DNA of 64,000 nt from Macrostomum hystrix (taxonomy: Eukaryota > Animalia > Platyhelminthes), in NCBI GenBank assembly GCA_950097015.1, contig CATNEN010000034.1, forward strand, positions 7,254,001-7,318,000, in the 5' to 3' direction. How positions within the stretch are numbered: the first letter of the stretch is position 1; the number at the start of each line of letters is the position of its first letter. Of this stretch, positions 1-33,551 are shown one piece after another. The translations under genes were made by a program, and so were the position numbers. A model generated the notes under the pieces. That model was not told where the DNA came from and searched no databases. It saw only the letters and a list, made by a program, of their open reading frames with translations.

Positions 1-844
1 CTGCGGCAGCGAAGGGCATTGCCAGCAGGGCGGGCTGACCGGCTGCGGCAGCGGCAGGCAATGGGCCAACCAGCAGTTTATCGGGCTGCTGCACCAGCTG
101 CACGGGATAAATCTGCTGCCAAAGCAGCTGCAGGTGATAATTATGAGCCTCGGCAACGTGACGACTTAATTCGCGACGCAGACGACTGGCGGCCGGACAG
201 CCGAACTTGTTGAACGGACAGAGCAGCAGAGACAGCGGGCAGGCCTTCTCCAGATGGTCCTGGAGGCGCTGCGGACCGGCCAGGACGAGGCCGCAACGAT
301 TCGGACAGGGCAGGGGAAAGGCAGGACAGCCGAATAGCAGGTGAAAATTCAGCTGCCTGTAGGCGGTGCTGTGCTGGCAGAATGGGCAGGCTACGGCGGC
401 TGATGAATCGGCGCACTGGCAGGCGGCTGCGGCGGTGTTGGCGGCCTTCTCAGCATTCGCCTTGTCTGCGGCGGCACTGGCGCCGTCCTGCAGGTGACTA
501 GCCAGGTGGTTAGCCAGGCTGCCGAGCTCGCAGGGCGACCGACACCGAGGGCAATGCACTAGAAGCTGTTGAACCTCGCGATCGGTGGCCAGATCGCTGA
601 ATACTCCGGCGCCCTGAATGGAAGGATTCGATTGGGCGCCTTCGCCAATGGGCGATCGGCACAGAGGGCAGGCCGGCCTATAGGGCCCGGGCCCGCCGCC
701 TGCGGTGGCCGAATAGAAACAGCTGTGACAAAAACGATGCCCGCAACAGGTCTGCAGGGCCGAGCGCAGGTGGCCCAGACAGACGGGACACTTTAGCCGA
801 TCTGGCACCGGCTGGGCAAACTCTAGGTCTTCGTGTTCACACAT
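1..844 (-). CDS. TRAF: TRAF-family RING + TRAF zinc-finger E3 ligase/adaptor (TRAF6/TRAF4-like), 3' end beyond the window
   Basis: Manual translation from ATG at 844 stays open to base 1 (281 codons): MCEHEDLEFAQPVPDRLKCPVCLGHLRSALQTCCGHRFCHSC...CPLC (TRAF-type RING), VFSDLATDREVQQLLVHCP, CPFC...H..GC, CPNRCG...LQDHLEKACP, CPFNKFGCP...RELSRHV (TRAF zinc fingers). The ORF track misses it because it has no stop inside the window. No MATH domain is visible here. Confidence 0.88.
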   Translation of the reverse strand, partial: MCEHEDLEFAQPVPDRLKCPVCLGHLRSALQTCCGHRFCHSCFYSATAGGGPGPYRPACPLCRSPIGEGAQSNPSIQGAGVFSDLATDREVQQLLVHCPRCRSPCELGSLANHLASHLQDGASAAADKANAEKAANTAAAACQCADSSAAVACPFCQHSTAYRQLNFHLLFGCPAFPLPCPNRCGLVLAGPQRLQDHLEKACPLSLLLCPFNKFGCPAASRLRRELSRHVAEAHNYHLQLLWQQIYPVQLVQQPDKLLVGPLPAAAAAGQPALLAMPFAAA

Positions 845-1008
845 TTGCTGACTGCACTAGGCTAGCGTAGTTGCTGAATTCAAGAATCTTTGTAGATCAA
901 GTTCGGATAGGAGATCAGACGGCTCTTTGCGCTGCAATTGGGAATATTAAACAATAGGCAATTTTTTCCAAGGTAAACGTTGTCTGTTGACATGGATATG
1001 GTGTATAC

Positions 1009-5149: not shown

Positions 5150-5370
5150 ATTGCAGCCCAATGATTAAAGCTCGGACTTCTAATCAAGAGGTCGGGAGTT
5201 CGATTCTCAGCCTATGGAAAATTTTGTGGCCTTGAGCAAGACACTTTATTACCCATTGCTTCAGCCTACCTAGTTGAGAAACGGGTGCCGGAAAAGCTGA
5301 GATAGCTTACCAGCTTACCAGGGTTGGAGTAATTAGATAAGCCGATATGTATCGAAATAGTTATAATTGC
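5150..5370 (+). mobile_element. tRNA-head SINE with a CORE-like central domain
   Basis: Pol III B-box-like GGAGTTCGATTC followed by GTGGCCTTGAGCAAGACACTTTATTACCCATTGCTTCAG, resembling the CORE/MIR motif GTGACCTTGGGCAAGTCACTTAACC. It lies antisense just 3' of the RNF217 stop. Confidence 0.65.
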
Positions 5371-5384
5371 ACTCAGGCACACAG

Positions 5385-7029
5385 CTAGGCAAAGAGCCAT
5401 TCAGGCACAATAACATGTTCAACACAATTGTCACTGTCGTGCAGTAGCACAGCCGTGGTGACGCAATAGCTCCTAATGACATTGTCGGGCAGACCCACTT
5501 CAATTGTCCGCTCCGCTATTGTTTGATGAGAATCAATTGAATTGCCCGAAGTTGCTGCCGCAGCCACCGACGCTGACGCGGCCGCTCGAACGCAGAAGGC
5601 TTCGCGTGACAGTTGCGCCTTACGTCGCAGGGCCCGACGTAGGCGACGCCTACGAAGGGCGGTGAAAGCGGCGTAGGCGGCCAGAACGCCGGAGCCAACG
5701 AGGGCCGTTCCGAGGCCGAGGACTAGCAGGGCCGGCGCGGCGACGAGTTGGACTGCCAGCACGCAGCCGCGGACCAGGCGTCGAAGGTGCGGCCTGTCGG
5801 GCAGCAGGTTGTATCGACAGCCCATGACAGACATGCGCGATTTATGCGAGCCCAGCAGGGGGCAGCGGGCGTAGCGCTTGCCGCACATGTAGCAGAATCT
5901 GGTGCCGCACTGTGAGCACGTCATTGAGTCGCAGCCCTGGCTCTTCTGAATGTAGGCGCCGCAGCCGGGGCACTGTCGGGCATTGCGTTGGGTGCCCTGG
6001 GCGGCGTCACAGCGGCGCGACCAGGCTAGAAGTTCTTGATCGCTGGCACGAAATTGGCGACAGGTGACGCCACGGTGCATCGGCGCGTGACAGGGGAAGC
6101 ACCAGACTAGGCCGCAGGAGGCGCACTCCACCTTGGAGAAACGGACGAGTTGGAGCGACAACAGGTGAGACTTGATAGTGGGATGAGACTAGACAGTGGG
6201 ATGAGACTAGACAGTGGGATGAGACTAGACAGTGGGATGGCACTAGACAGTGGGATGAGACTAGACAGTGGGATGAGACTAGACAGTGGGATGAGACTAG
6301 ACAGTAGGATGAGACTAGACAGTAGGATGAGACTAGACAGTGGGATGAGACTGGACAGGGGATGAGACTAGACATGGAGATGAGACTAGACATGGAGATG
6401 AGTCAGAGACATACCTGCAGAGGCCTACGCCAGGCTTTAACGGACAGCTCAGTGTGACAACCGCATCCAGGGCAGGTCTTGCGCAGCGGCCCATTAATTC
6501 GCGAGTTGTCTAGAAAGCGCTGATAACGCCAGCGCTCCTCGTAGGGCAGTCGGCACATGACCTCGGCCTGGGGCATGACCTTGTCGCAGAGCAGATTCGG
6601 ACAGCCGACAGTGGTCTGGGCCTGTCGCATTGTCTCCAGTGCATAGGCTGTTAGGCATCTGGCGCAATAGATCTTGGCGCAGCACGGCCTGGCGAAGGTG
6701 CTGACGCAGGCTAGGCAGATATCGCACACCAGGCCAATGCACAGCTCACCAAGCGGCACGATGGCATTGTGAGCGTCTGTCTTAAAGTCTTCATTGTTCT
6801 CAGTGTTGACCAGGTGGGCGGCGATGGCCCGGTAGGGGGCCGGGTAGTCGCCCAGGTTAGCAGGGCTGGGCGGACCGCAGCGGACGCCGCGGAGGCTGCG
6901 CAACGACTTGGCTAGCCAGCGTTGAAGACTCTGACGCGGCACTGAGGCTAATTCGTGCGGATCCAGGTCGTCTAGGGGCTCCGACTGGGCTGCAGCCGCC
7001 ACCGCCGCCGCCGTCACCAGCTCGACCGA
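5385..7029 (-). CDS. RNF217: RBR (RING1-IBR-RING2) E3 ubiquitin ligase with C-terminal TM segment, RNF217-like; exons 7029-6415 and 6131-5385
   Basis: RING1 CDICL...CCAKIYCARC...CPNLLC; IBR KTCPGC...|VECASCGLVWCFPCHAPMH; RING2 CPGC..YIQKSQGCDSMTCSQCGTRFCYMCG; GCRYNLLPDRPHLRRLVRG followed by a hydrophobic helix matches the RNF217 signature. The phase-0 GT-AG intron 6414-6132 joins LQ|VEC in frame. About 454 aa. There is no ATG at the start of the exon. Confidence 0.9.
6175..6400. repeat. 18-bp minisatellite (GATGAGACTAGACAGTGG)n filling most of the RNF217 intron
   Basis: Direct periodicity; gives the MRLDSG/SSHCLV repeat ORFs. Confidence 0.92.
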
Positions 7030-7142
7030 CTGAAGAGAATGAAGCGAAACCAATTAGGTAGATTATACGAGTCATTTACTTGTAATGGATTACTGGGGTC
7101 TGTGCTGAGAAAATTATTTATAAGCCTAGCAGGGAGAGAGAA

Positions 7143-7186
7143 AGACAGACAGACAGATAGACAGAAAGGCAGACAGACAGACAGCC

Positions 7187-7227
<41 letters not shown>

Positions 7228-7326
7228 GGCAGACAGAAAGACGGGCAGACAGCCAGACAGAAAGACAGACGGACAGGCGAGACAGACAGACAGGCAAGGC
7301 AGACAGACAGGCAAGACAGACAGACA

Positions 7327-7375
<49 letters not shown>

Positions 7376-7405
7376 GGCAGACAGACAGACAGACAGGCAG
7401 ACAGA
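7143..7405. repeat. (GACA)n microsatellite between the TPR 3' end and the RNF217 acceptor
   Basis: Imperfect tetranucleotide repeat. Confidence 0.95.
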
Positions 7406-7528
7406 CAGGTCAAGAACTTCTAGCCTAGTTTGGCTAGCTAGACTAGTGTAAGCACTGAAATGGAGGAAACTTAAAAGGCAGACTGGTACAATGAGATTCA
7501 ATTCCGAAGATGACAATTTCGATTGCCA

Positions 7529-7534
7529 TTTATT
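7529..7534 (-). promoter_or_regulatory. Candidate TPR polyadenylation signal (AATAAA)
   Basis: TTTATT on the plus strand, about 300 bp downstream of the TPR stop codon. Confidence 0.4.
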
Positions 7535-7829
7535 AAAAAATAGCATTATGCCTCTTTACACATTCAATGAGTCAGAATTTCGCGAATTTTCCCAACCAGT
7601 ATTAAGTGAATCAATTGCACACAGAATTTCACTAGCCTACAATGCACTGCTACATATGGCTACCCGAAATCAGTATATATAAATAATAAAATAAAAGCCT
7701 ATTCAGCAAATTAAAGATCATGTCAGTTTAAAACACAAACAGGGAGAAATTTCAGGCAGGGAAGTGAAACAAATGCGTTGGGATATTGTTTTAATGTGTT
7801 AACAAATAACAAAATTGGAGTATTAAGGT

Positions 7830-10800
7830 TCAGGGCGACTCGTTTCTTTGTATGGTGAATTTGGTGCCAGAACTGGCGGGCCTGGTGCCTAGCTGCTGCT
7901 GCTGCTGCTGCTGCCGAGACGCCTGGCCCCAGAGCGCACCTCGCCTGACGGAGGACGAAGGCCCAACGTCGCCACCCTGTTGCTCGCCGGTACTTGCAGA
8001 AGAGGAAGTTGACGAGGGAAAAGTGGCAGGTCGCAGGATGCTCGATCGCGGACCGGACTGCTGCTGCTGCTGCTGCTGAGTTGAGGACGCCGCGCCGAAC
8101 AGACTGGCGCCGCTGCTTGGCCCGGCAACAGAGCCAAATAAGCCAGAGGGTGCGGACACAGCCTGCCGGAAACTGAAAGGAGCTCCAGCCGAAGTGGCCG
8201 CGCTGGCAAATGTCGACGACTGTTTCGAAGTGGCGGCATCTTCGCCTAGCTCGGCTTCGTCCTGCTGACCGGCGTCCATCTCCTCCTCTTCTTCGGCGTC
8301 TTCATCTTCAATCTGCTCTTCATCTTCTTCTCCAGCTTCGTCTTCGCCGCTCTCACCTTCGGCCTCCTGATCTTCCTCATCGTCGTCATCTGCCTCGTCC
8401 TGGCCGTCGTCGCCTTCGTCTTCCATTGGGGCGTCAGCAACGGCAGCCGGAGCCGCAGACTCGGCCTCCTCAGTGGCCTCCTCATCCTCGGAATCGCTGC
8501 TCAGAGTTATAGTTTCGCCAGGCGCAATGGGAGGCGGCGCCGATGATCTCATCGACGTTGGCGCCAGACGATGAAACTGGGCGAAATGAGCGCCGCCACG
8601 ATGAGCGCTGAAGCCGGCGGCCGAAGCCGAGTAGGTGGCTCCACCTTCGTCGTAGTCTTCTTCTTCCTCGTCACCCTCATCGTCTTCCTCCTCGTCGTCG
8701 TCTTCGCATTCGTCCTCTTCCTCCTGAGAGATGCCCTCAGCTTCTGTTTCACCTTCGCATTCGGCGGCCTCTTCTTCGTCGCCTTCCTCCCCCTCTTCCT
8801 CCTGGTCGGCCGCTGACGCCTCCTCAAGGGCGTGCTCCTCCACACTCATCGGCTGCAGACGCGCTCGTTTCGGTTGGGATGCCACGGTGTCCTGGAAGCC
8901 ATACGAACCCTGACTGGCCTCGCCGCCGCCTCCGCCACTGCCAGCACCTTCGTCATCGTCGGCTGCGGAAGCCGATGCAGACGCGGACGCATCGCGACGC
9001 CGTTCCAAGGCGACAAAAGCTGCGGCGATATCGGCGGCGGCGGATGAGGAAGTGGCCGCGACGGCAGTTGATTCGGATTCTTCAAGCAGCTGGCGCGAAC
9101 GCTTTAAGCCGCTGGTGGCGCCGCCAATCGAAGCCGCCGCAGCTGAAGTGGTCGATGATGCGGACGGCATGGCGGAGACCTCAGCCGGTGGCATAGGTGT
9201 CACCAGTGCCTGTGGCGGCTGCAGCTGATGCAGCAGGGTTGGAGCTGTCTCGTCAACTGTCGTTACAGACGACGAGGACGATGGAAGGGTCGGCGGCGGT
9301 GGCGGAGGCGATCGGGACGGAATCGGCTGCTGCGGCGAATGAGCCTGCTGGCTAGACACCGAAGTTGCTTCGTGCTGCGGCGTCGGATGCACAGCGACAA
9401 TCACCGGCTGCGGCAGTGGCAGCGAAGGCCTCAACAGCGGAGTAATTTCAGCTGTCTGTTTAGCCTCTCTGGCTGCGACCGGATGCTGGGGCGTCGGCTT
9501 CACCGTCATCGTGTGCTTCAGCGCTTCAATGTCCGGACTGCTCTTCATCACAGTGGACGGCGCCGACTGTTGCGATGAAGTCTGAGGCTGCTGCTGCTGC
9601 GACTGAAGCTGCTGAACAGGGGGCTGCGAACGGGGGCGCTGTTGATGCTCTAACTGAGCCTCGAGCTCGCCTAGTTTAGCACGAAGACTAGCATTATCAG
9701 TGCTTAGCATTCTGTTGTGCCGCTCAATTACTCCGATGCGCATCCGAGCCTCGGACACTTCATCATTGAGGCGGCTTTTCTCCGACTGTAGCTGTTCTGC
9801 TCGACGAGCCGCGGCTTCAGCTTCCTGCTGCTGCTGCTGTGACGGCAACTGCTGCTGTTGCTGCTGCTGCGCTCGCAGTTCCTGCGTCTCTTGTTTGTAC
9901 TTGCGTGCAACATCCTGAATCTTTTTAAAGCGTTCCTTTAACTCTTCGTGTGTGCGCAGCACTCGTTCGCGTTCAACAGATGCTTCGCTAGCCTCACGTC
10001 TGGCTGCGGTAGCGGAGGTCTCAGTGGCACGCTGCGTCTCCTCCAGATCGGAGATTCTACTGGCTGCATCTGCCAGCCGCTGAGCCAGTCTCTGTCTGTC
10101 AGCAGAAGACTCCTCAAGTTCCCTGCGCAGACGGTCCCGCTCCGCTGTGGCCTGACGTAGAGCCTCGGGATCGGCCAGCTGCTGCTGCTGCTGCTGGTGC
10201 ACGCGCTCCTGACGCTCGGCTCGTTGAACCAGTTCAGCTGAGCGCTGTCGCCATCGCGCGCACTCATCTCTAGCCAGGCTGAGATCAGATTCAAACCTGC
10301 GACGCTCCTCGCGCAGTCCGTTTAATTCTGAGCGAAGCGGCTCCAGTCGATTGTTGGCAGCAGCAGCAGCTGATTCGAGTTCGGCTAGGCGAGAGCGCAA
10401 CTCGGTCTGCTCGCGTCTGAGCAGCCGGTTGCTTTCGGTAACTAAGCTCAACTGTTCGACTCGCTCCAGTAGACCGGCGTGGGCGGCGTCCGTAGCAACC
10501 GTCGCACGCTGCTTCTCCTGCTCAGCTTGAAGCTCGGATTTGGCTCGATCAGCCGCCGCCTTTGGCGTCCTCGGCTAGTCGGCGCAGCCGAGCGGTCTCC
10601 TCGCGCAGCTGAGCAGCCTGACTCTCGGCCAGGTCGCGTTCACGTCGCAAATAGCGCAACAGTTGGAGCATCTGCTCAGCTGATTTGGCCGCCTCCGGCG
10701 TCGGCAAATTGGATGACGATTCGTTGGCGACGTCCGCTGGAGCATCGGTTTCTTCAGCAGATACAGGCCGACGCATCGCCAGCATCTGGGTGACGGTCAG

Positions 10801-13800
10801 CTCGGCCTGGTCCTGCAGATTGGCGCACAGCTCCCTTGCCTCGGCTAGGCGAGCCTCCAGCGCCGTCTTCTCCTCGGTCAACGCGTCGTAAGCCGCCTGA
10901 CGCTCAGCTAGACGCTCGTCTAATGAAGCCTTCGAAGAAGCCAGCTCGTGCTTGAGATTGTGCAACTCAGTGCGCAGGCCAGCCAAGCAGTGCTTGGTCT
11001 CTGAGTGAGCTCGAACATCTCCGGCGTGCAGCACCAGCTCCTGCTGGTACTTGGCCTCGGCCTCCGTTGCCCGATCCGCAGCTGCTTTGCCGTCCTCCGC
11101 GCCGCGCTCGTAAGCCGCCAGAGCCGTGTCGCGCGCTTCCTCGGCATCGCGCGCCCGACTCTCTAACTCGGCTAGGCGACGCATCAAATCGGCCCGCTCG
11201 GCATCGAATTCGGCGCCGAGGCGCTCCGATCTGGTGCGCCAATCGGCAGCCTGACGCTCGGCCGCCTCGGCTGCAGCCCGGAAACTGCGGGGTTTTTTTG
11301 GTAATCGGAAGATCAGTAAGGATCTGAATTTAGGGGATTTTTAATAAATATAAGGATTTAAAAAATAAAATATTGGGATCATATAGAAAGTTAGGAACTT
11401 GTCTGATCCCATAGTTTTATGAACCTTGAAGAGTGTAAATGTTAAGGCTTGGTGATAGGACAATGGTTACCCTGACCAATAACACGGCTCACCGATCCGA
11501 CTCCTCCTGCTCATTGCGCAGTCTGTCTTCAACATCAGCCAGCAGCCTCTCGTGCACGATGGCCTGCTCAGCCAGGCGCTCTTCGACGCCGGCCGACACT
11601 CCGCGATATTCAGCTGCCTCGACGCGCAGCCGGTCAACTTCGCGTCGGGCCGACTGCAGCTCGGCTTCGAGCTCGGCGCAGCGCAGCTTAGCCAGACGGA
11701 CTTCGTCGTTTTCAACGCCATCCTGCTGCTGCTGAGTGGTCGGCGTCTCGGTGATGGCCGACGACGCAGCGTTCTGCGCTATGCGAAGCTCAACCCGGGC
11801 GCGTTCTAGTTCGGCCTCTCGAGAGCTCAAGGCCTCGGCTAGTCTTGCTCGCTCGGCTTCGACACTGACCAGCCGTTCGCTCAACCGACGCGAGTCCCGC
11901 TCCAACTCGGTTCGCTCATCCGCTAGGCGCCCAGTTTCGCTGGCCAAGCGGGCTCCAAGATTGTCAACTTCGCGTTGAAGCGCTTCGATGCGCGTCTCGG
12001 CGGCTTCGTGCGATTCGCGATCGCGTCTATCTAGACTGCGGCGCATCTCCTCTAGGCTGGCCAGTAGAGCGCGCTGTTGCCCGCCGGCCTCGGCGCGCAG
12101 TCGCTCGTTTTCAGCGCGCAGGCGACACTCGCTTGGCCGCAGCGAGTCCAGCTGGGAGCGGGCCTCGGCTATCTGAGCCTCCAGCTTGGCTGCCACGTCT
12201 GCGCTGGCTGCCGCCGCCGACCTGGCCTGGCTGGCCTCCTGCTCGCTGCGGGCGCGAGCTTCGACAGCGCGCTCCGCCGCCTGACGCAGTGCGGCTATCT
12301 CGCGACGCTGCTCGGCCGCGTTGGACTCCTGCGCGATTCATTAAATTGATACTTTGATTACAAAACTGATTGATAGTATCTATTAATAGATTGATTGATA
12401 GTACCGATTGATTGATAGTATCGATTGATTGATTGATAGTACCGATTGATTGATTGATAGTATCGATTGATTGATTGATAGTACCGATTGATTGATTGAT
12501 AGTACGGATTGATTGCTTGACAGTATCGATTGATTAATTGATAGTATCGACTGATTGATTGATTGATTGATTGATAGTACCGATTTATTGATTGATAGTA
12601 TCGATTGATTGATTGATAGTATCGATTGATTGCTTGATAGTATCGATTGATTAATTGGTAGAGTATTGGAGAAATGTCTGTTAGAAAAGAGAAAAAATGA
12701 GGATATTTAAAATACCCACGTGGCCTCTCTACTGTTGATAAATTAATTGGCCTATTTAAAGTTCCTACCTGCAGCCTGGCCTTCTCGTGATTCGACTCCA
12801 GCTGAGCAGACAGGCGCGCGCTGAGTTGTCTCAGCCTATCCAGGTCGCCTCTAGTCGATTCCATTTCGGCATCGCGAGCCGCGTCCCGCTGCGCCCGATC
12901 GGCTTTGTAGGCGGCGAACTGATCGCCTAGTTCGCTCAGGAGTCGCTTGAGTTCGTCGGCGCTATTGGACGATTGTTGCTCCTCGTTGGCATCGGCCAGC
13001 GGAGGCCGGATGGAGGCCGCGCCAGACGCAGGCGACAAAGACGGATGGCGAGGCTGGCGGTGGAGCTGCGACTTGTCCGGCGATGGCAAGTGGGAATGCG
13101 CGGATGCTTCGGCCAGTGCCGCCTGTGGGGTACGAGAGAAATTTGGGATCAGACAAAACTATGGGATCCATCCAAAACAATGGGATCTGACTAAAATATG
13201 GGAACAGACAGGCCTGTGGAAAATTAAAAAGACACTAGGATCCAAGAAAAATTCAGCCCACCTGTTCCGCTTCGCTCAGACCGAACAGGTTGGCCACCTG
13301 CGGTCCGGCGTGGCACAGCAGGACGGCGCGCATGGCATCCCTCTGCCTCGCCGCGGCGCTAAGCAGCATTCTGTGCTGCGCCTCTGCGCTACGCAATCGA
13401 TCCAACTCGCTTGCCAGGCCGGCCAGCTGAGCACGCAGCTCCGACTCTGATTGACAGGCGTCAGTTGGTGACGAAACCGCAGCAGCCTCCATCTCCTCTA
13501 GTTTGTTGGCCAGCTCCCTGCTCACCTGAACAGTTGACGGTTGGGGATAATCCGCTATGGGGTGATTGACAGCTGGGGATAATAATCCGCAATGGAGTGA
13601 TTGACAGTTGGGGATAATAATCCGCAATGGATAATAATCCGCAATGGAGTGGTTGATAGTTGGGGATAATAATCCGCAATGGAGTGATTGACAGTTGGGG
13701 ATAATAATCCGCAATGGAGTGGTTGACAGTTGGGGATAATAATCCGCAATGGAGTGGTTGACAGTTGGGGATAATAATCCGCAATGGAGTGATTGACAGT

Positions 13801-16800
13801 TGGGGATAATAATCCGCAATGGAGTGATTGACAGCTGGGGATAATAATCCGCAATGGAGTGATTGACAGCTGGGGATAATAATCCGCAATGGAGTGATTG
13901 ACAGTTGGGGATAATAATCCGCAATGGAGTGGTTGACAGTTGGGAATAATAATCTGCCATGGAGTGATTGACAGTTGGGGATAATAATCCGCAATGGAAT
14001 GATTGATAGTTGGGGATAATAATCCGCAATGGAGTGGTTGACAGTTGGGGATAATCCGCAATGGAGTGGTTGACAGTTGTGGATAATAATCCGCAATGGA
14101 GTGGTTGACAGTTGGGGATAATAATCCGCAATGGAGTGGTTGACAGTTGGGGATAATAATCCGCAATGGAGTGATTGACAGCTGGGGATAATAATCTGCC
14201 ATGGAGTGGTTGACAGTTGGGGATAATAATCCGCAATGGAGTGGTTGACAGTTGGGGATAATAATCCGCAATGGAGTGATTGACAGCTGGGGATAATAAT
14301 CTGCCATGGAGTGATTGACAGCTTGGGGATAATAATCCGCAATGGAGTGATTGACAGCTGGGGATAATAATCCTGCAATGGAGTGATTGACAGCTTGGGG
14401 ATAATAATCCGCAATGGAGTGGTTGACAGTTGGGGATAATAATCCTGCAATGGAGTGATTGACAGCTGGGGATAATAATCTGCCATGGAGTGATTGACAG
14501 TTGGGGATAATAATCCGCAATGGAGTGATTGATAGTTGGGGATAATAATCTGCCATGGAGTGATTGACAGCTGGGGATAATAATCTGCCATGGAGTGATT
14601 GACAGTTAGGGATAATAATCCGCCATGGAGTGATTACAGGGAAGGGAACTTTTTAAAAGCCGCCAATGGTGAGTTCTAATTTGAGCCCAAATTGAGAGCT
14701 CTCTCACCTGCAGTAGCCGCCTATTCTGTTCCTGCAGCTGTTCCACATCGGCATAGGTTAGCAGTCTCTCTGTAATGACGTCACCAGCCCGCCTGACCTG
14801 ACCAGCAGATTCAATAACGGACGCTGATTGACGATAAAGCATCGATGACTGGGAGGGCGGTTCGCCAGTTTTGACTAGGTGCAGCTCCCAGAGCAGTTTA
14901 GTCAGCTGGCGAGACTGGTCCGAGCACTCGTCTGCTAAGCGGCGATTCTCACGCTCCAGGTGTCGCAGGCCGCGCAGCCGGTCCTGACTATCGGCCTTGT
15001 AGTCGGCCAATTCGGCCAGAGCCGAGTCCAACTGTCGGCTGAGCTGCGCGGTGGCCGCCGTCAGCCTGGCGTTGTCTTCACGCAGTCTGCGCACAGCGGG
15101 AGCACCGGCTTCAACTTCGCGCATAACGGCTTGTATTGATTGGCGCAGAGCGGCTGCCTCCTGACGCTCAAGTTGAAGACGACGCTGGGCATCGGCATAT
15201 TCGGCGCACAGCTCGCTGATTGGCTTTCCGCGCTTCAGCAGGTCGCGCACAACAGCCGCCGCCGGCGTCATGTCGGCAACCTGGTCAGTGGTTTCTGATT
15301 CACCGCGCAGAGATTCGATTTGTGAGTTGGCCAGCTGTAGGGGGGTGTTTTTTAATGCCGGTTTGTGTTCTTTTTATTATGGCCTCTGAGAGATATGGGT
15401 GACAATGGAGAATAGACATCAGCTGAAGGAAGTGTGTCAGATGGGTGACAATGGAGAATAGACATCAGCTGAAGGAAGTGTGTCAGATGGGTGACAATGG
15501 AGAATAGACATCAGCTGAAGGAAGTGTGTCAGATGGGTGACAATGGAGAATAGACATCAGCTGAAGGAAGTGTGTCAGATGGGTGACAATGGAGAATAGA
15601 CATCAGCTGAAGGAAGTGTGTCAGATGGGTGACAATGGAGAATAGACATCAGCTGAAGGAAGTGTGTCAGATGGGTGACAATGGAGAATAGACATCAGCT
15701 GAAGGAAGCGTGTCAGATGGGTGACAATGGAGAATAGACATCAGCTGAAGGAAGTGTGTCAGATGGGTGACAATGGAGAATAGACATCAGCTGAAGGAAC
15801 TGTGCCAGATGGGTGACAATGGAGAATAGACATCAGCTGAAGGAAGTGTGTCAGATGGGTGACAATGGAGAATAGACATCAGCTGAAGGAAGTGTGTCAG
15901 ATGGGTGACAATGGAGAATAGACATCAGCTGAAGGAACTGTGCTAGATGGGTGACATCAGCTGAAGGAACTGTGCCAGATGGGTGACATCAGCTGAAGGA
16001 ACTGTGCTAGATGGGTGACATCAGCTGAAGGAACTGTGCCAGATGGGTGACATCAGCTGAAGGAACTGTGCCAGATGAGTGACATCAGCTGAAGGAACTG
16101 TGCCAGATGAGTGACATCAGCTGAAGGAAGTGTGCTAGATGGGTGACATCAGCTGAAGGAACTGTGCTAGATGGGTGACATCAGCTGAAGGAAGTGTGCC
16201 AGATGAGTGACATCAGCTGAAGGAACTGTGCTAGATGGGTGACATCAGCTGAAGGAACTGTGCTAGATGGGTGACATCAGCTGAAGGAAGTGTGCCAGAT
16301 GGGTGACATCAGCTGAAGGAACTGTGCCAGATGGGGGACATCAGCTGAAGGAACTGTGCCAGATGGGGGACATCAGCTGAAGGAACTGTGCCAGATGGGG
16401 GACATCAGCTGAAGGAACTGTGCCAGATGGGTGACATCAGCTGAAGAAAGTGTGCCAGATGGGGGACATCAGCTGAAGGAACTGTGCCAGATGGGTGACA
16501 ATGGAGAATAGACATCAGCTGAAGGAAGTGTGCCAGATGGGTGACATCAGCTGAAGGAACTGTGCCAGATGGGGGACATCAGCTGAAGGAAGTGTGTCAG
16601 ATGGGAGACATCAGCTGAAGGAAGTGTGCCAGATGGGAGACATCAGCTGAAGGAAGTGTGTCAGATGGGGGACATCAGCTGAAGGAAGTGTGTCAGATGG
16701 GAGACATCAGCTGAAGGAAGTGTGTCAGATGGGGGACATCAGCTGAAGGAAGTGTGTCAGATGGGAGACATCAGCTGAAGGAAGTGTGTCAGATGGGAGA

Positions 16801-19800
16801 CATCAGCTGAAGGAAGTGTGTCAGATGGGAGACATCAGCTGAAGGAAGTGTGCCAGATGGGGGACATCAGCTGAAGGAAGTGTGTCCAGATGGGGGACAT
16901 CAGCTGAAGGAACGTGTGTCAGATGGGTGACATCAGCTGAAGGAAGTGTGTCAGATGGGAGTGACATCAGCTGAAGGAACTGTGTCAGATGGGAGACATC
17001 AGCTGAAGGAAGTGTGTCCAGATGGGGAGACATCAGCTGAAGGAAGTGTGTCAGATGGGAGACATCAGCTGAAGGACGTGTGTCAGATGGGGGACATCAG
17101 CTGAAGGAACTGTGCCAGATGGGAGACATCAGCTGAAGGACGTGTGTCAGATGGGAGACATCAGCTGAAGGACGTGTGTCAGATGGGAGACATCAGCTGA
17201 AGGAAGTGTGTCAGATGGGTGACATCAGCTGAAGGAACTGTGCCAGATGGGAGACATCAGCTGAAGGACGTGTGTCAGATGGGAGACATCAGCTGAAGGA
17301 AGTGTGTCAGATGGGAGACATAAGCTGAAGGAAGTGTGCCAGATGGGAGACATCAGCTGAAGGAAGTGTGCCAGATGGGAGACATCAGCTGAAGGAAGTG
17401 TGCCAGATGGGAGACATCAGCTGAAGGAACTGTGCCAGATGGGAGACAATGGCGATTAGACATCAGCTGAAGGAACTGTGCCAAAAGAACACGAACAACG
17501 AACCTGCAACTCGTCATTCTTCTTGTCCAGCATTGCCCTGGTGTTAGCCAGGCTCGGTCTCCAGCCTGCGGATGATGGCATTGCGTTCAACTTCGGCTCT
17601 GCTGAACTCCTCGGCGCTGCGTTTCAAATCTGACTGCAGTTCGCTAACGGCCTCCAGGAGTTGAGCGCACCGACGCTCATGCTCCTCGGCGCCAGACTGA
17701 AACACCGCTGCTAAACGGCGCTGCGATTCTAGCTCACCGCCGAGTGTCTCCTCCAGGCTGGCTCGTTCGTCGCGCGCCTCACGCAAGGCGTTCCAGCAGG
17801 CGCGAGTGCTGCTCTCGCAGCGTGGCCTGGGCGTCGCGCGCCGACGCCAACTGTGCGTTGGTTGATTCTAGTTCGCCAGCCAGACGATCCAGTTCTAGCT
17901 GGTGCTGACGGTCGCTCTCCCTAGCCGATTGGCGCAGTGTAAGAAGCTCGTCAGTTTTAACAGCCAACTGGCGCTCTAGCCAGGCCAGGTGGCCGCTTCG
18001 CTCAGTGTCGGATTGCTCAACTGAGGCCAGGCGCACGCTGGCCGATGCTGCGCTGATTCGGGCCTGATAACATTTGATAAAATTAGCAAAAACATGCGGA
18101 CTGTGCTACTGTGAGTAGGATACAAAAGTAACTTACTTCTTGCTGAGTACCCAAGTTACTCACCATCAGCATATCGACTGTCACTCTTCCCTAGTCTATC
18201 GACATGTCACTCTCCCCAGTCTATCGACTGTCAAACTCCTCCAGTCTATTGAACTGTACACTCTCCCCAGTCTATCAACTGTCAATCTCCCCAGTCTATC
18301 GACTATCACACCCCAGTCTATCGACTGTCACTCTCCCGAGTCAATCGACTGTCACTCTCCCCAGTCAATCGACTGTCACTCCCCCAGTCTATCGACTGAC
18401 ACTCCCCCAGTCTATCGACTGACACTCCCCCAGTCTATCGACTGTCACTCCCCCAGTCTATCAACTGTCACACCCCAGTCTATCAACTGTCACTCTCCCC
18501 AGTCAATCGACTGTCACTCTCCCCAGTCTATCGACTGTCACTCTCCCCAGTCTATCGACTGTCACTCTCCCCAGTCTATCAACTGTAACTCTCCCCAGTC
18601 TATCGACTGTCACACCCCAGTCTATCAACTGTCACTCTCCCCAGTCAATCGACTGTCACTCTCCCCAGTCAATCGACTGTCACTCTCCCCAGTCTATCGA
18701 CTGTCACTCTCCTCCAGTCTATCATCGACTGTCACACTCGCGCAGTCTATCATCGACTGTCAACACCCCTGCAGTCTATCCACTACTGTCACTCCCCTGC
18801 AGTCTATCCACTACTGTCACTCCCCTGCAGTCTATCCACTACTGTCACTCCCCTGCAGTCTATCCACTGACTGTCACTCCCCTGCAGTCTATCCACTGAC
18901 TGTCACTCCCCCTTCCCAGTCTGACGATTGTCACTCAGTCCGTCGCCAATAATCCTCCCTGTCTGAAGACATTACTAGACCCTGGAAAAGATCAGTTCTT
19001 CCATGCGGAATCCAAGAGTCTATTATCACAATCGTGAGAAAAAAATAGTACAGAAAAAAATGAAAGTCATCAAACAGATGACCCAGCTGCGCATAAGCAT
19101 AAGCCAATCGCACACCAATCAAGAAATCTGCTACAGCTGCAACGGAAAGAGAAGATTTCCAAACGATATTTTTTCTAACGATTGCAAGAACTGCGAATCA
19201 ATTTTCTCTTGCACACCTGCGTTCGTTCGGATATTTAGGATCCAACATCCTGCATATCCATCCAACATCCTAAATGTCGAACCAACATCCTTAATATCGA
19301 ACCAACATCCTTAATTTCGAACCAACATCCTAAATATCGAACCAACATCCAGAATACCGATTGCTCATAGTGAATATCGTTCCAAATATCCCAGCTAATA
19401 TCGATCTAACATCCCCAATATCCCTACGTATGTCAGTTCAACATCCTCTAAATGAAGCCTATAGCCGAACAGTATTATTAATCCACCATCTTCAACATCT
19501 AACCTAGCTAATATCGATCCTACATTCTCTAAATCAATCCACAATCTTAATATCGACCCAGCATCTCTAATATCGTACGTACCTGATCTAGGAGCACCTG
19601 CTTCTCAACAGCCTCCCGTTCAGCCCGCTGCAATTGGCCGCGCAGTCGTTCAGCCTCAGCGCCTAGACGTTCTACCTCGTCGGCTAGCCGCCTAGTGGAG
19701 TCGGCCAGATTGTCGCGCTCGACGCGCAACTCGCCAAACTGCAGCCGCAGCTGCTCCTTGGCGTCGTGCATGGAATCCAGTTGAGCACGCAGCTCAGATT

Positions 19801-20098
19801 TTGTGCGCTCGGCTTTGCCTAGCTCGTCGGTTAGGCGAATTCGTTCGGCTTCCGCCGACTCTAATCTAGCCCGAGTTTGAGCAGACTCATTTGACAGACT
19901 ATCGCATCTAACTGTCAGGTCAAACACTCGCTGTTCATTGTCAACTCGCTGCACTTCGCATCTCTCTTTAGCGCTGGTTAATGCAGCCTGTAGGCTGTCA
20001 ATCGCCTCTAATAGATTCTGGCGCTGCCAGTCGGCTAGGCTGGACCAAACTGATTGGTCAACGCCGCAGGCCTGCACCAGATGGTAGTCGGTTGTGGC
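7830..20098 (-). CDS. TPR: Nucleoporin TPR/Megator/Mlp1; exons 20098-19583, 18063-17504, 15334-14708, 13525-13262, 13122-12769, 12328-11493, 11284-7830; three +1 frameshifts
   Basis: Long coiled coil with TPR signature segments ITERLLTYADVEQLQEQNRRLLQ|VSREL, EQMLQLLRYLRRERDLAE and EQLSLVTESNRLLRRE, plus an acidic/low-complexity C-terminus. All junctions are GT-AG with consistent phases once the three single-base insertions are removed; about 2,200 aa. Confidence 0.9.
12345..12660. repeat. (ATTG)n/GATAGTATCG degenerate satellite in a TPR intron
   Basis: Visible periodicity; gives the NRYYQSI repeat ORF. Confidence 0.9.
13535..14635. repeat. 35-bp minisatellite (GATTGACAGTTGGGGATAATAATCCGCAATGGAGT)n filling TPR intron 14707-13526
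   Basis: Direct periodicity that runs to about 10 bp from the acceptor. Confidence 0.96.
15395..17485. repeat. Compound 46-bp then 32-bp minisatellite (core GACATCAGCTGAAGGAAGTGTGTCAGATGGGT) filling TPR intron 17503-15335
   Basis: 46-bp units (core plus GACAATGGAGAATA) to about 15950, then 32-bp units; about 60 copies in total. Confidence 0.96.
18170..18930. repeat. ~24-bp minisatellite (CAGTCTATCGACTGTCACTCTCCC)n in TPR intron 19582-18064
   Basis: Direct periodicity; a second degenerate array (AATATCGAACCAACATCC) occupies about 19245-19560 of the same intron. Confidence 0.92.
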
Positions 20099-23000
20099 CT
20101 GGAAAGCATTGACAGCATTGACAAAAACTCTTAAAAAATGACAGCATTTCTGCTTTTATGTACTTAATAGTTAATTAAACAGTTCTGAAATTAGCATTAA
20201 GCTTCTTCAATCGAAAATGAATTTATCTAGCTAGTTAATAATGGAGCAATATATGCAGAACATCAGTGTGCACTTTCTCAAAATCTATTTATTTGGTAAA
20301 CTATTCAAGCAGCTAAATATATGAATTTTTATATGAATACCATACCAGTTTTGGATAAAATTTAAAGTAAATATAATAACAAAGTTTTATGTGTATTAGG
20401 CTATACAAAGTATATTAAAATTGGTATCCTTTACAATGTACATAGATATATGGTATTGGGCCCTATTGGCATGACATTGATTTTATATTAAAAAACAAGG
20501 TACTAAATTCTATATACACATATTTTGCAAATTATTTCAATCAAAAAAATATGCTTTGCTTTGTTGACTTATAATTATTCAGATAAATTTAAATTGTTTA
20601 ATAAATTTTGAGTGTTTGGAGAACATAGAAATAGCTCTAAATTAGAACCAATTATTTTTTATATAAAAGTCAGGTTCTTTCCAGTTTACTTGTCTTAGAG
20701 AAAAAGAAATATCATATCATACCAACACTGACCAAAATAATTAATAAGCAAGATGAAAAATATAACATGACAATAAAAGTAAATTATTACATTATCTAAA
20801 GCTTACAATATATTACTCACTACTGAAAATTTAATGACATGACTTAATTTGTTATTTACTTACTTATTTACAAAATGACAAAATGTAAAATTGACTATAG
20901 TGCAAGATTTCTATAGACAGAACCTATAAAAAATATTTTTTGACAATATAATAAAAACTAATTTCAGTTGTAGGAGGGTTGTGGGAATTGGCTCACCATT
21001 TGGTGACAGTAGACCCACTATCAGTGAAGAAGCCATTTGGCCCATTTTGCTGATTTGTAAGCACTAGGCATACAGATACTATATGCAGGCATATGCTCAC
21101 AGAGATGTGTAGATCTAGACCCAGACTTTCTTATCCTTGGGCAGTGTACACAGGCTGTTATTCTTTGAAAATTTGACCCTAATGGGTATAATTTGCATGA
21201 TAAGCCTCCAAAACCTCTAAACCTCTGTGGCTACACCAGAAATTAGTGTGGCCCCATCATGGAATCAAGCTTAGGGACCTTGGTACAAGAGATAAACCAC
21301 TTTATCACTCACTCACAATACACAAAATTTTTATTTAATTGTGATGATTGATGGCAATAGTATGTAAGAAAAAATACTTGATATTAGTCTGTATTTAAAT
21401 TACTTGAAAATTGTTGACATGAGACTCAATCAAAATGTCAAACAGAACAAACTAAATGTTGATGTCAATCAGAATGCCAATGGTCATTGAATACATAATA
21501 ATTAATATAGCTTTTTTATTTTTATAAATTCAAATTAAAATACAAAAAAGTGGAATATTTATTGCTAAACAAACCTATTAAACAAATATAATATAAATAT
21601 TTGTGGCATAAATTTACTTTCATTAGCAAAATATTTTTTTTAAAATTCAAAATGGTGCTAAACGCACGGAAATGATGTGGCATGAAATTTTCCTTGTTTT
21701 CTATGGCCATAACCAGCTTGGCAGCATCTGAATAGCATAAAGAACTATAGCAACATTTCTAACCTTATTAGTGACTTCAATAAGACAATATTTCCACGCT
21801 TCCAACTGAGAATGGCTAGATGGCCACCTAGACCTTCATAGATTGTGCCTCCCAACAAAGCACTGACAGAGCTCAACCTCAACTCAAGGGACATAATGTC
21901 AGTAACGCCAAATGTGGATGAGACCATGCGTTGGCTTGCGCAGCATGGACTGCTCAGCAATCAGCGGATTCTTCATTTTGTACTAGATTCGTCACTACTA
22001 TCCTGTATAAAATCTAAGTAAACTAAACCAAACTGAATTAAACTGACTAAATTGTTACAACTACTATAAACTGAATTGTTTCTGCACTGAACTGTTTGCC
22101 CGCTGTTTTGTTCTGTTTCCATGCATTTTGCCCTAATGGAGGGAATTTAAATAAGCTGCAGACACTCCTGCTAGGTGCGCAGGTGCGCAGTTGTTTTCAA
22201 GAAAAAGAGTGCAAATCCGCAATTGGTATATATCTTCAGGCTGACTCAATGTAGTAATTGATTTCAATAAAAAATGTCAAAAGACCTTTTTTGATCTCCG
22301 TAGTGTATTTCTAAAAATAGAACAGGTACTTGGTGATTTTTCAAAAATATGGACACATATACCAAATGACCTTTTTTGATCTCCGTAGTGTATTTCTATA
22401 ATTAGAACAGCTAAGGTTGTCTTTTCGCACTTGGGCACTGCAGAGCATGTATTCGTGTAAGGACACAAGGGCATACTGTTTGTTATACATCTACATACTT
22501 ATGACAACTTTACACACACAAGGCGCAGCCACGTGGATAGGAATTTCTTTCTGCGCAGCCGCGCAGGCCAGTGTCAGGATTGTGTACTGGTGTACGCCGG
22601 AATGAAATTTGATTCCCTAGCTCCTGTACGCCAATGTACGCCAGCAGATTTATGTCGCTCACGAAAATACGCCAAGCAAAATTTGCACTTACATTATGTT
22701 CTCACTCCTACAGAAATCAATTTCAATTTCAACGGTGACAGAGTAACGGAATTATAAAGTCTATTAAGTTTACGACCGACAGACCGAAAACTGATTTTGA
22801 AAAAATGATGTTGATTAACAATATTAAACAAAGTGTTGACGGTAAAAATTTAATTTACCAAAGAAGACTTTTGTCTTTCAAACATTGTAGGGCCTATATT
22901 TAAATAATAAATAAAAGGCTTAAAGAAAAATTTTAAGCAATTGCTAGTACTGCACTTTTGAAAATTGACGTGATGTTGTTTGCAGAGTGCGAATGGTGGA

Positions 23001-25805: not shown

Positions 25806-27226
25806 ATGACTTCGCACAGGCCATTGTCTACTGGAGTCACTGGGCAATCGAGTATGACTCCTGGCGCGCTAGTCTTCTGCTTAGTTCTCCTAGCAACAGC
25901 GACTACGCGATCGGCCTATTCAAGCAGCGCCGAAGTCTCTAAAGACGAGTCCACTGGCGAGCTGATAATCTCCGTGGTGTCCAGTCGGCCGGAAACGACC
26001 TTCTCTGGTCGGATTGGTCAAAGAAACAATTTCGGTTACGCTTCTAATTTTCGAATGAATTTCGCTGCCGGAGAAGAGTTCTGCGTCTACATGCCAGTTC
26101 TTGGAATGCGCAACTTTAGCTGCGCTATATTGGTGAGCTGTGCTGCATTCCACACCTTGGGTAGATGGCAGTAGAGACCGTGGATAGATTAGTGTTGACA
26201 ACGGGTATAGATTGCAGTAGAACCCGTAGGCAGATTACAGTAGAGTCCATGGGTAGATTTTAGTAGATGCCGTGGATAGATTACAGTAGAGGCTGTGGGT
26301 AGATTGCAATAGACACCGTTGGTAGATTACAGTACAAACGGTGCATGCAAGTACTATTAATTAGTGGAATTCAATAAAAACGATGGTAGATTCGCAGAGG
26401 AACTTTTATACATAAAAATAAAAACTATTTATAAGAAAGCAGCAAATTTTCAGATTTAATACCAAGTCGAAAGTGATATCAGCAAATATTTATTAATTTG
26501 AATGTTTCTGAAATAAAAAAACATACTGACTGTTGGAGGAGACAACATTTCAGGCTTTAAAATACTGGGACATGGACGCGGAGATTGAGTTGAGCAATTC
26601 GGAGGGCGACATAATTGGAACTAGCAAGCTAGTCGCCGCAGGAAGGAGGCCGCCAGTTGCAGCAGTTCATTTCTATGAAATACCCAGGCCTGGCAAGCAG
26701 ACAACAATCTGTACAATTTTTTAAATACCCACACCTTATGAATCTTAATACCACAGTTGCTATTTTTTCCAGACATCGTTCAACTGTGCGTTCGTAACAC
26801 CGGCTCAACCAAAAATATCGCATTAGTTATGCATTTAACAAATCAGAAGGATCTCATGGAATTCCTGACTTTGCACACAGCGCTGGGCGAGAGTCACAAC
26901 ATTTCTGCCGTGAGTTAAAACTTAAATGATTTTCTAAAAACTGCGATATTTTTGTAACGTCAAAACTCAGCACAACGAAGCTAGGAAACGCTCCATGCAA
27001 CACGCTTCAGGAATCCATCATTCGAATGGACAATCTACTACTCCAGAGCGTCGAGCACTGCAAGGCCTCAATGTCGCTTGTCGTTCAAGACTATTTTCGT
27101 CTATCAAACATTCAAAACTGGGTTGACGGTCGAGGCATTGCAGGCTCGCTGGCAATGCTATTGTGCAGCGGAATGTCGACGCTGGTTATTCGTCGTTGGT
27201 TTGGCTCGCCAAGATCCACTGTTTAA
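25806..27226 (+). CDS. TMED: Divergent p24/TMED (emp24/gp25L) protein, paralogue A; exons 25806(or 25854)-26132, 26554-26692, 26773-26909, 27011-27226
   Basis: Signal peptide, GOLD-like domain (NFAAGEEFCVY...DAEIELSNSEG...QLCVRNTGSTKNI), helical region, TM helix and tail RRWFGSPRSTV. Exons 2-4 (139/137/216 nt) have the same lengths as in paralogue B. Intron 2 has a GC donor. Confidence 0.78.
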
Positions 27227-30854: not shown

Positions 30855-31348
30855 CCATCTTTGCGACTTTCATATTCGTCCACGTAGACCTTCGGCTACG
30901 TGGTGATAACGTCGGGACTGCACCACCACTCGCAGTAGGCGCGCTGAAGCTGCATGTTCTCAGGTGAGTTGCGTTCCACGGGTAAATCTCTCACCAACTT
31001 GGTAGTGTACAACAGACCGTCGAGATGTCGACTTATGGTAGCGATTGAAACTTCCTGCTTCTCGGGGAAGCGGGCGTGCAGTGCCGTCTTCAACTCGGCC
31101 AGAGTGATGCTCGGGTCCACGGTGATGGCATCCCCAAGAAACGCCTTCATCTCATCGTTCTCTCGGCTAAACGTGTGCTCTCCCCTCGGCAGCTTTGCAG
31201 GTCTCCCAGTATGCACTATCGTGTAGGCCGTCGTGCGCTTGACGCCCAATGTGCGCGCAAGGGCCATGAAGTCATCGCCGTTGGCCTGGGCTTGAATAAG
31301 ACGGTGACGGTCTCGTCTCTGACCCTGACGTAGTTGCGATGGGGCCAT
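30855..31348 (-). mobile_element. Truncated Tc1/IS630-family transposase relic
   Basis: Paired HTH-type N-terminus (LARTLGVKRTTAYTIV; PSITLAELK...VSIATISRHL...YTTK...RNS). After an in-frame TAG the frame continues PKVYVDE (first catalytic Asp region) and then breaks off. Confidence 0.75.
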
Positions 31349-33386: not shown

Positions 33387-33551
33387 TACTTACTGCTACA
33401 AAAGTTACAGGCTCTGAGAATGAGAAGGCTCGAACAGCTTGTTGCAAACTTGCAAATTACGTTTATAACGTGGGATGGAAGCGTCCTTTATTTGAAAACT
33501 AGTCGCCGGCCTATTTAATGACACTAGAACTCCCGTTATGTTATGACGTTA

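What the first reader, a model, noticed from the sequence alone, without database searches (positions are those of the whole stretch)
5385..20098. Candidate TPR-RNF217 operon in which a trans-spliced leader may donate the start codons
Seen: RNF217 exon 1 begins after a clean acceptor (TTCATTCTCTTCAG|TCG GTC GAG, 7029) in phase 0, and the next in-frame ATG lies inside RING1. I found no convincing ATG-bearing upstream exon in the ~800 bp up to the TPR stop. TPR's first recognisable exon also begins in phase 0 (TTTCCAG|GCC ACA ACC, 20098) and needs only a Met to give a normal-length N-terminus. The two genes are on one strand, 0.8 kb apart, with an AATAAA between them. Known: flatworm spliced leaders end in AUG, which can act as initiator Met, and SL trans-splicing resolves polycistronic transcripts. 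Inference: both proteins start with a leader-encoded Met (M-SVELV..., M-ATTDY...) and are co-transcribed.
Basis: partly seen in the sequence, partly recalled or inferred. Interest (0 to 1): 0.75.

Follow-up and report, generated by a model that had tools for sequence, protein, structure and literature searches.

The report
Spliced-leader start codons, TPR-RNF217 pair
In this Macrostomum flatworm the ubiquitin-ligase gene RNF217, and probably its upstream neighbour TPR, have no start codon of their own and most likely borrow the AUG that ends the trans-spliced leader, which is a known flatworm habit; that the two genes form one operon is plausible but unproven.

Summary
The sequence observations are all confirmed. 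Both acceptors are where stated (7029 and 20098, minus strand) and in phase 0. Each has an in-frame stop and no ATG upstream. The TPR stop lies 0.8 kb before the RNF217 acceptor, with an AATAAA between them.

The genome (Macrostomum hystrix according to earlier scan notes) carries many SL RNA genes whose 35-nt leader ends in ATG|GTAAG.

For RNF217 the reading is well supported:
- The acceptor and its phase are conserved in M. lignano.
- All three M. lignano copies are annotated without a Met.
- Those copies are 99% identical, yet the three bases just before codon 1 read CATG, GCAG and GATG. This is most simply a footprint of leader-bearing RNA reads used to polish that assembly.

For TPR the evidence is thinner. 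Similarity to M. lignano TPR starts exactly at the acceptor. A chance-level ATG|GTGAG inside a SINE 0.9 kb upstream cannot be excluded.

The pair meets the published Macrostomum operon criterion and the gene order is conserved, but no RNA spanning the two genes could be reached.

The mechanism is known (Cheng et al. 2006; about 15% of M. lignano genes lie in operons), and this scan has already found it at several other loci of this genome. I rate it a new member of a known kind, of modest interest.

The parts
7830..20098 (-). TPR (nuclear-basket nucleoprotein) gene, from its first recognisable coding base to its stop codon
   Evidence: Pfam TPR families on three exons. tblastn of M. lignano TPR (P0003) gives collinear exons from 20098 down to 8088. 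Stop TGA at 7832-7830.
19583..20098 (-). TPR first coding exon: 172 codons, phase 0 at both ends, no in-frame ATG before codon ~128
   Evidence: Translation. Donor CAG|GTACGT at 19582. 69% identical to M. lignano TPR from its first residue on.
20099..20120 (-). Candidate trans-splice acceptor of TPR (ttccag, 65% pyrimidine tract)
   Evidence: fits [T/C]TNCAG.
20948..21297 (-). tRNA-derived SINE copy holding ATG|GTGAGC at 20999-20994. This is the only good candidate for a cis exon that could give TPR its ATG.
   Evidence: candidate. (more than 1000 candidate copies in the genome). (other copies read ATGATGTG, so the donor is particular to this copy). About 0.17 such sites are expected by chance in 5.8 kb (own calculation).
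7529..7534 (-). AATAAA in the TPR 3' UTR, about 300 nt after the stop
7135..7408 (-). Pyrimidine-rich (GTCT/CTGT)n microsatellite between the two genes. M. lignano has a related 16-bp-unit array at the same place.
7030..7051 (-). Trans-splice acceptor of RNF217 (cttcag, 80% pyrimidine tract)
   Evidence: It aligns with the acceptor ccctgcag of M. lignano copy L016.
6415..7029 (-). RNF217 exon 1: 205 codons, phase 0, with RING1 and the start of the IBR; first in-frame ATG at codon 134
   Evidence: 77% nucleotide identity to M. lignano exon 1.
6132..6414 (-). RNF217 intron (GTATGT...CCAAG), mostly an 18-bp tandem repeat (6166-6402)
   Evidence: The exon junction agrees with M. lignano proteins P0001 and P0006 (...RRPLQ|VEC...).
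5385..6131 (-). RNF217 exon 2: rest of the IBR, RING2, hydrophobic C-terminal segment, stop TAG at 5387-5385
   Evidence: Pfam IBR and IBR_1
5245..5250 (-). AATAAA about 135 nt after the RNF217 stop

Best explanation
Shown:
- The RNF217-like gene begins at a splice acceptor (7029) in phase 0 and has no start codon of its own.
- The genome encodes SL RNAs whose leader ends in AUG directly before the GU donor.

Inferred:
- The leader is trans-spliced to 7029, so its last three bases become the initiator codon (M-SVELV...).
- The same most likely holds for TPR at 20098 (M-ATTDY...), with less support.
- The two genes lie head to tail with about 0.5 kb of non-repeat spacer. This fits the operon definition used for Macrostomum, so RNF217 may be cut out of a TPR-RNF217 precursor by 3' end formation plus trans-splicing. 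That step is not shown.

My odds: RNF217 uses the leader AUG, about 0.8; TPR does, about 0.55; the two are co-transcribed, about 0.45.
For: (1) The leader. The exact 35-nt M. lignano SL (PMC8629364) occurs at least 23 times without mismatch in this genome, in tandem arrays. It is followed by GTAAG, and the about 105-nt RNA folds into three hairpins with z = -3.5.

(2) No genomic ATG. In-frame stops lie upstream of both acceptors, with no ATG between stop and acceptor. For RNF217 no ATG-plus-donor candidate of quality exists up to the TPR stop.

(3) Conservation of the RNF217 acceptor. The M. hystrix acceptor aligns base for base with ccctgcag|TTG GCC GAA in M. lignano copy L016. Both are in phase 0, and an in-frame 24-nt indel lies just downstream, so the stretch is coding up to the acceptor in both species.

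(4) M. lignano annotation. All three RNF217 proteins are '5' partial' with no Met. One of them (P0006) starts at exactly the first codon after the junction.

(5) Footprint at the junction. The three M. lignano copies are 99% identical, but the 3 nt before codon 1 read CAT, GCA and GAT, each followed by G. This is the only run of 3 or more adjacent variable columns in about 8550 aligned columns. The changed bases equal the leader's last 4 and 3 bases. That assembly was polished with Pilon using RNA-seq reads (PMC5730564), whereas M. hystrix was polished with DNA reads only.

(6) TPR. Similarity to M. lignano TPR starts at residue 1 of the exon (window 20098) and nowhere upstream of it. A weak alignment to the human TPR N-terminal crystal fragment puts exon residue 27 opposite human residue 21, so a Met at the acceptor gives a normal-length N-terminus (E = 2.7, only suggestive).

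(7) Operon.
- The two genes are on the same strand with no gene between them.
- Stop to acceptor is 800 bp, or 526 bp without the microsatellite.
- The M. lignano rule is less than 1 kb after removing repeats, with the downstream gene trans-spliced (PMC8629364).
- The TPR-RNF217 order is kept in all three M. lignano copies, with 689-700 bp of non-repeat spacer in the two I measured.
Against: No M. hystrix transcript, SL-bearing read or read-through RNA could be reached. Word searches with both first exons were blank, and records near this genome appear to be withheld from the contig look-up.

The footprint argument is an inference about an assembly artefact in another species.

For TPR, the M. 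lignano 5' genomic sequence could not be fetched. An ATG|GTGAG 0.9 kb upstream would give the same protein by cis-splicing.

For the operon:
- The spacer is longer than the about 100-bp mode of M. lignano operons.
- It exceeds the 300-bp rule used for parasitic flatworms (PMC12582326).
- A TATAAATA lies about 90 bp before the RNF217 acceptor, so an independent promoter with a short outron is possible.
- Conserved gene order within one genus is weak evidence.
Confidence: 0.62

Rival explanations
1. RNF217 is trans-spliced and uses the leader AUG, but from its own promoter in the spacer. It would be a monocistronic gene with a short outron, so TPR and RNF217 would be neighbours and not an operon.
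For: - About 60% of trans-spliced M. lignano genes are not in operons (PMC8629364).
- The spacer from the likely poly(A) site to the acceptor is about 480 bp, well above the about 100-bp mode.
- A TATAAATA lies about 90 bp upstream of the acceptor.
Against: - The TATA-like motif is not conserved in M. lignano.
- The non-repeat part of the spacer is short in both species and hardly alignable.
- The pair meets the published operon rule.
Confidence: 0.4
2. TPR gets its ATG from a cis-spliced 5' exon, for instance the ATG|GTGAGC at 20999-20994 inside the SINE copy. Such an exon could be used alone or alongside trans-splicing at the same acceptor.
For: - The site has a perfect GTGAG donor in phase 0, 898 nt upstream of 20098.
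- The two substitutions that create the donor are particular to this SINE copy.
- Shared use of one acceptor for cis- and trans-splicing is common at first genes in parasitic flatworms (PMC12582326).
Against: - About 0.17 such sites are expected by chance in the 5.8 kb upstream (own calculation from base composition).
- It lies in a repeat with more than 1000 copies.
- The SINE carries several upstream ATGs that would burden a 5' UTR.
- No conservation could be tested.
Confidence: 0.22
3. RNF217 has a missed, ATG-bearing cis exon further upstream, or translation starts at a non-AUG codon or at the internal ATG of codon 134.
For: Small 5' exons are easy to miss. An earlier case in this genome turned out that way (scan note s1-316733).
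Against: - No acceptable ATG-plus-donor exists in the 800 bp up to the TPR stop.
- The acceptor and its phase are conserved, and the M. lignano models are all Met-less.
- Starting at codon 134 would delete half of RING1.
Confidence: 0.08

Closest known systems
Use of the flatworm spliced leader's 3'-terminal AUG as initiator methionine (Schistosoma mansoni; Cheng, Cohen, Ndegwa and Davis, J Biol Chem 2006, as cited in PMC12582326)
   Same: The leader ends in AUG directly before the donor. The recipient exon starts in phase 0, and the mRNA has no ATG of its own.
   Different: The species is a free-living macrostomid and the genes are different. Here translation from the leader AUG is inferred, not assayed.
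SL trans-splicing and operons of Macrostomum lignano (Wudarski et al. 2017, PMC5730564; Ustyantsev and Berezikov 2021, PMC8629364) and SL annotation of M. hystrix (Wiberg et al. 2023, PMC10468722)
   Same: - The leader is the identical 35-nt sequence.
- The acceptor motif is the same, [T/C]TNCAG.
- The operon rule (same strand, less than 1 kb after removing repeats) is met.
- Repeats fill the intercistronic spacer, as those authors describe.
   Different: This particular gene pair has not been described to my knowledge. Its spacer is at the long end of the reported range.
Caenorhabditis elegans SL2-type operons
   Same: The downstream gene would be released by 3' end formation of the upstream gene coupled to trans-splicing. 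There is a pyrimidine-rich spacer.
   Different: - No specialised SL2 is known in Macrostomum.
- The C. elegans spacer is about 100 nt with a defined U-rich element.
- The nematode leader supplies no start codon.

Membership tests
mRNA that takes its start codon from the flatworm spliced leader | The species has an SL RNA whose leader ends in AUG directly before a GU donor | tested here: met
   Exact 35-nt leader followed by GTAAG in many tandem copies; canonical three-hairpin fold. A second variant, also ending AUG|GUAAG, is present.
mRNA that takes its start codon from the flatworm spliced leader | [quoted passage not shown] | tested here: met
   Both genes. For RNF217 the position and phase are conserved in M. 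lignano.
mRNA that takes its start codon from the flatworm spliced leader | No genomic in-frame ATG available before the conserved part of the protein | tested here: met
   A stop and no ATG upstream in frame. The first ATG is codon 134 (RNF217) or about codon 128 (TPR). For RNF217 there is no good cis exon. For TPR one chance-level candidate remains.
mRNA that takes its start codon from the flatworm spliced leader | RNA molecules with the leader joined at that acceptor | tested here: inconclusive
   No M. hystrix RNA was reachable. There is indirect evidence for the RNF217 orthologue in M. lignano: Met-less transcript-based models and leader-like bases written over the acceptor in two of three copies of an RNA-polished assembly.
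mRNA that takes its start codon from the flatworm spliced leader | Protein N-terminus begins with the leader-encoded Met | not testable with these tools
   Needs N-terminal proteomics or ribosome profiling.
Spliced-leader operon (Macrostomum definition, PMC8629364) | Adjacent genes on the same strand, less than 1 kb apart after subtracting repeats | tested here: met
   800 bp from stop to acceptor, 526 bp without the 274-bp microsatellite. No ORF of note lies between the genes.
Spliced-leader operon (Macrostomum definition, PMC8629364) | Downstream gene is SL trans-spliced | tested here: inconclusive
   Strongly suggested but indirect; see the rows above.
Spliced-leader operon (Macrostomum definition, PMC8629364) | A polycistronic precursor exists and there is no promoter between the genes | not testable with these tools
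   Needs RNA-seq or long reads and cap mapping.
Spliced-leader operon (strict rule for parasitic flatworms, PMC12582326) | Intergenic distance of 300 bp or less | tested here: not met
   About 480 bp from the likely poly(A) site (AATAAA at 7534-7529) to the acceptor, and 800 bp from the stop. The authors themselves call the rule conservative.
Nucleoprotein TPR | TPR/MLP1-type coiled-coil domains | tested here: met
   PF25785 (1.4e-17), PF07926 (3.6e-12) and PF25481 (5.7e-5, below its cut-off) on separate exons. Best library hit is M. lignano 'Nucleoprotein TPR'.
RBR E3 ligase of RNF217 type | RING1-IBR-RING2 followed by a membrane-spanning C-terminal segment | tested here: met
   IBR and IBR_1 above cut-off on exon 2. 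The cysteine pattern of RING1 in exon 1 and the hydrophobic stretch after RING2 are read from the translations. Orthology to human RNF217 in particular rests on my recollection of the human sequence and was not tested with a tool.

The most novel reading that the evidence does not exclude
The CATG, GCAG and GATG variants at the RNF217 junction of the three M. lignano copies could be real rather than a polishing artefact. In that case, very young paralogues would alternate between a leader-donated and a genome-encoded start codon at the very same codon. That would be a direct snapshot of how genes enter and leave dependence on the spliced leader.

A weaker variant of this reading is that the pyrimidine-rich microsatellite, kept between TPR and RNF217 in both species, is a functional intercistronic element.
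Probability: 0.15. Interest if true: 0.6.

Novelty: new member of a known kind. Interest (0 to 1): 0.3.

Why it matters
For annotation, both genes would be called '5' partial' or given false internal starts unless the leader AUG is taken into account. The M. lignano RNF217 models are indeed all Met-less.

The pair adds a conserved candidate operon (nuclear-basket TPR plus a membrane RBR ubiquitin ligase) to the Macrostomum list.

The side observation may be more useful. An assembly polished with RNA-seq reads seems to have had leader bases written over a trans-splice acceptor. That creates a false genomic ATG and destroys the AG. If this is general, it would mislead gene models and evolutionary comparisons across the M. 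lignano reference.

Tried and rejected
**Transcript evidence**
- Word-index protein searches with RNF217 exon 1 and TPR exon 1, meant to reach RNA-derived contigs, were both blank.
- The search with RNF217 exon 2 gave only the M. lignano genome models.

**M. lignano TPR 5' end**
- The only library hit, P0003, is a chimeric UniProt model that is not on record in the contig index.
- The three fetched loci stop inside the TPR gene.
- The genome search does not take M. lignano loci as handles.
- The other two hits of the exhaustive search were unrelated coiled-coil proteins.

**Literature**
- Looking up the M. lignano gene name found nothing.

**Analysis that had to be redone**
- A first count of clustered mismatches between M. 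lignano copies was swamped by tandem repeats. I redid it on repeat-free segments.

**Rejected readings**
- Start at the internal ATG, because it would cut RING1.
- A non-AUG start at the TTG right after the upstream stop, because nothing supports it.
- A second gene copy with its own ATG, because both genes are single-copy.

- The spliced (joined) protein models were never searched as joined sequences. Exons were searched one by one by reference.


Full report
**What is there**

The window is G000:C34:7254001-7318000 of a 220-Mb, 42-contig genome. Earlier notes of this scan name it Macrostomum hystrix. That fits the 76-92% protein identity to M. lignano found here. Nothing suggests a human contig.

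Four genes lie head to tail on the minus strand:
- a multi-pass membrane protein (pieces at 40963..25919)
- TPR (20098..7830)
- an RNF217-like RBR ubiquitin ligase (7029..5385)
- a TRAF-like RING protein (856..2)

These are supported. TPR is identified by Pfam PF25785, PF07926 and PF25481 on separate exons. The RBR ligase is identified by IBR and IBR_1 on exon 2. Both genes are single-copy.

**Check of the observation**

- The acceptors read cttcag|TCGGTCGAG (exon base 7029) and ttccag|GCCACAACC (exon base 20098).
- Both are in phase 0.
- In frame upstream of each lies a stop and no ATG.
- The first in-frame ATG of the ligase is codon 134, inside RING1.
- The TPR stop is at 7832-7830, AATAAA at 7534-7529, and the spacer is 800 bp.
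- 274 bp of the spacer is a (GTCT)n microsatellite.
- An enumeration of every ATG followed in phase 0 by a GT found no acceptable donor in the 800 bp before 7029.

RNF217 has two coding exons:
- Exon 1 is 7029-6415, with donor CAG|GTATGT.
- Exon 2 is 6131-5385, with acceptor ccaag|GTG.

This structure rests and agrees with the M. lignano proteins. TPR exon 1 is 20098-19583.

**Does the species have the required leader?**

Yes. The published 35-nt M. lignano leader (PMC8629364) is present without mismatch at 23 or more places, mostly in tandem arrays. It is followed by GTAAG. The roughly 105-nt RNA folds into the canonical three hairpins with z = -3.5. Wiberg et al. (PMC10468722) also report that the M. 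hystrix leader likely contains the final ATG as a start codon, and that 10-20% of its genes are trans-spliced.

**RNF217: comparative and indirect RNA evidence**

M. lignano has three copies (P0001, P0002, P0006). Each has TPR directly upstream and the TRAF-like gene downstream. All three proteins are annotated as partial, without a Met. P0006 begins at exactly the first codon after the junction.

In a DNA alignment the M. hystrix acceptor falls on ccctgcag|TTGGCCGAA of copy L016, again in phase 0. A 24-nt in-frame indel lies just downstream, so the stretch is coding right up to the acceptor in both species.

The most telling detail concerns the three M. lignano copies.
- They are 99% identical over 775 nt, yet the three bases before codon 1 read CAT, GCA and GAT, each followed by G.
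- In about 8550 repeat-free aligned columns this is the only run of three adjacent variable columns.
- The altered bases are the last four (CATG) and last three (ATG) bases of the leader.
- The Mlig_3_7 assembly was polished with Pilon using RNA-seq reads mapped by STAR (PMC5730564). The M. hystrix assembly was polished with DNA reads only, and it shows the intact CAG.

My inference is that leader-bearing reads were written over the acceptor in two copies. If so, abundant M. lignano RNA carries ...CATG joined to TTGGCC. If the variants are instead real, they still place a start codon at exactly this codon. Either way the initiator Met sits at the junction.

**TPR: thinner evidence**

The exhaustive protein search returned one true relative, UniProt A0A1I8I885 of M. 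lignano. This is a 3169-residue chimeric model whose first 1188 residues belong to the upstream membrane-protein gene. Similarity to the M. hystrix exon starts at its very first residue (ATADY against ATTDY), and nothing upstream is alike.

A weak alignment to the human TPR N-terminal crystal fragment puts exon residue 27 opposite human residue 21. A Met at the acceptor would therefore give a normal N-terminus. That alignment is not significant on its own.

Against this stands one good cis candidate 898 nt upstream: ATG|GTGAGC at 20999-20994.
- It lies in a tRNA-derived SINE with more than 1000 candidate copies.
- Other copies read ATGATGTG at that spot.
- From base composition I expect about 0.17 such sites by chance in the 5.8 kb upstream, so it is no more than chance would give. 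It cannot be dismissed.

I could not fetch the M. lignano TPR 5' end.

**Operon**

The pair meets the rule used for M. lignano: same strand, less than 1 kb after subtracting repeats, and a trans-spliced downstream gene (PMC8629364).
- The non-repeat spacer is 526 bp in M. hystrix, and 689 and 700 bp in the two M. lignano copies I measured.
- Those authors noted that repeats inflate operon spacers. Here a related pyrimidine-rich array sits at the same place in both species.

Points against:
- The spacer exceeds the roughly 100-bp mode and the 300-bp rule used for parasitic flatworms.
- A TATAAATA lies about 90 bp before the acceptor, though it is not conserved.
- Gene order within one genus is weak evidence.
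- No RNA was available.

I put co-transcription at about 0.45.

**Comparison with what is known**

Use of the leader AUG as initiator was shown in Schistosoma (Cheng et al. 2006, cited in PMC12582326). Trans-splicing and operons are described for M. lignano and M. hystrix. This scan has already reported the same mechanism at several other loci of this genome. The finding is therefore a new member of a known kind.

**Limits**

All statements about RNA are indirect. Orthology to human RNF217 in particular rests on my memory of the human sequence.

Noticed in passing
L015:9991-9994, L016:9988-9991, L019:9997-10000 (M. lignano GCA_002269645.1): The three near-identical M. lignano copies differ only in the 3 nt at the RNF217 trans-splice acceptor (CATG, GCAG, GATG). 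This is likely leader bases written into the assembly by Pilon polishing with RNA-seq reads. If it is general, the reference holds false ATGs and destroyed acceptors at trans-splice sites.
   Followed up: partly
G000:C39:12667800-12668900 (L023); array C39:12.667-12.686 Mb: There is a second class of SL RNA gene, with a 3-nt variant leader (..GACTCTCTTTTTTGCATG|GTAAG). It sits in a 927-bp tandem unit together with a 5S-rRNA-like gene, in at least 20 copies. Its expression is unknown. Only one leader is described for M. lignano.
   Followed up: partly
G000 contigs C15, C17, C42 (for example L013:1838-2000): The canonical SL RNA genes lie in tandem units of about 11.6 kb, next to a U1 snRNA gene (Rfam RF00003, 151.7 bits).
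   Followed up: partly
window 20948-21297: A tRNA-derived SINE with more than 1000 candidate copies at about 73% identity lies 0.85 kb upstream of TPR, in the same orientation.
   Followed up: partly
window 2-856 (minus): A TRAF-like RING gene (zf-TRAF and RING Pfam hits) lies downstream of RNF217. It has its own ATG (..gcaaATGtgtgaa) 7 nt after a possible acceptor. The M. lignano models of it are also Met-less although the ATG is in the genome, so the 5' ends of that annotation are sometimes cut short.
   Followed up: partly
window 12361-14652 and 16824-17586 (minus): TPR introns are filled with long tandem repeats that stay open in several frames, giving false ORFs of up to 450 codons.
   Followed up: no
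window 25919-40963 (minus): The upstream multi-pass membrane-protein gene is fused to TPR in the UniProt M. lignano model A0A1I8I885. The fusion may only be a prediction error, or it may be a hint of read-through transcription into TPR.
   Followed up: no
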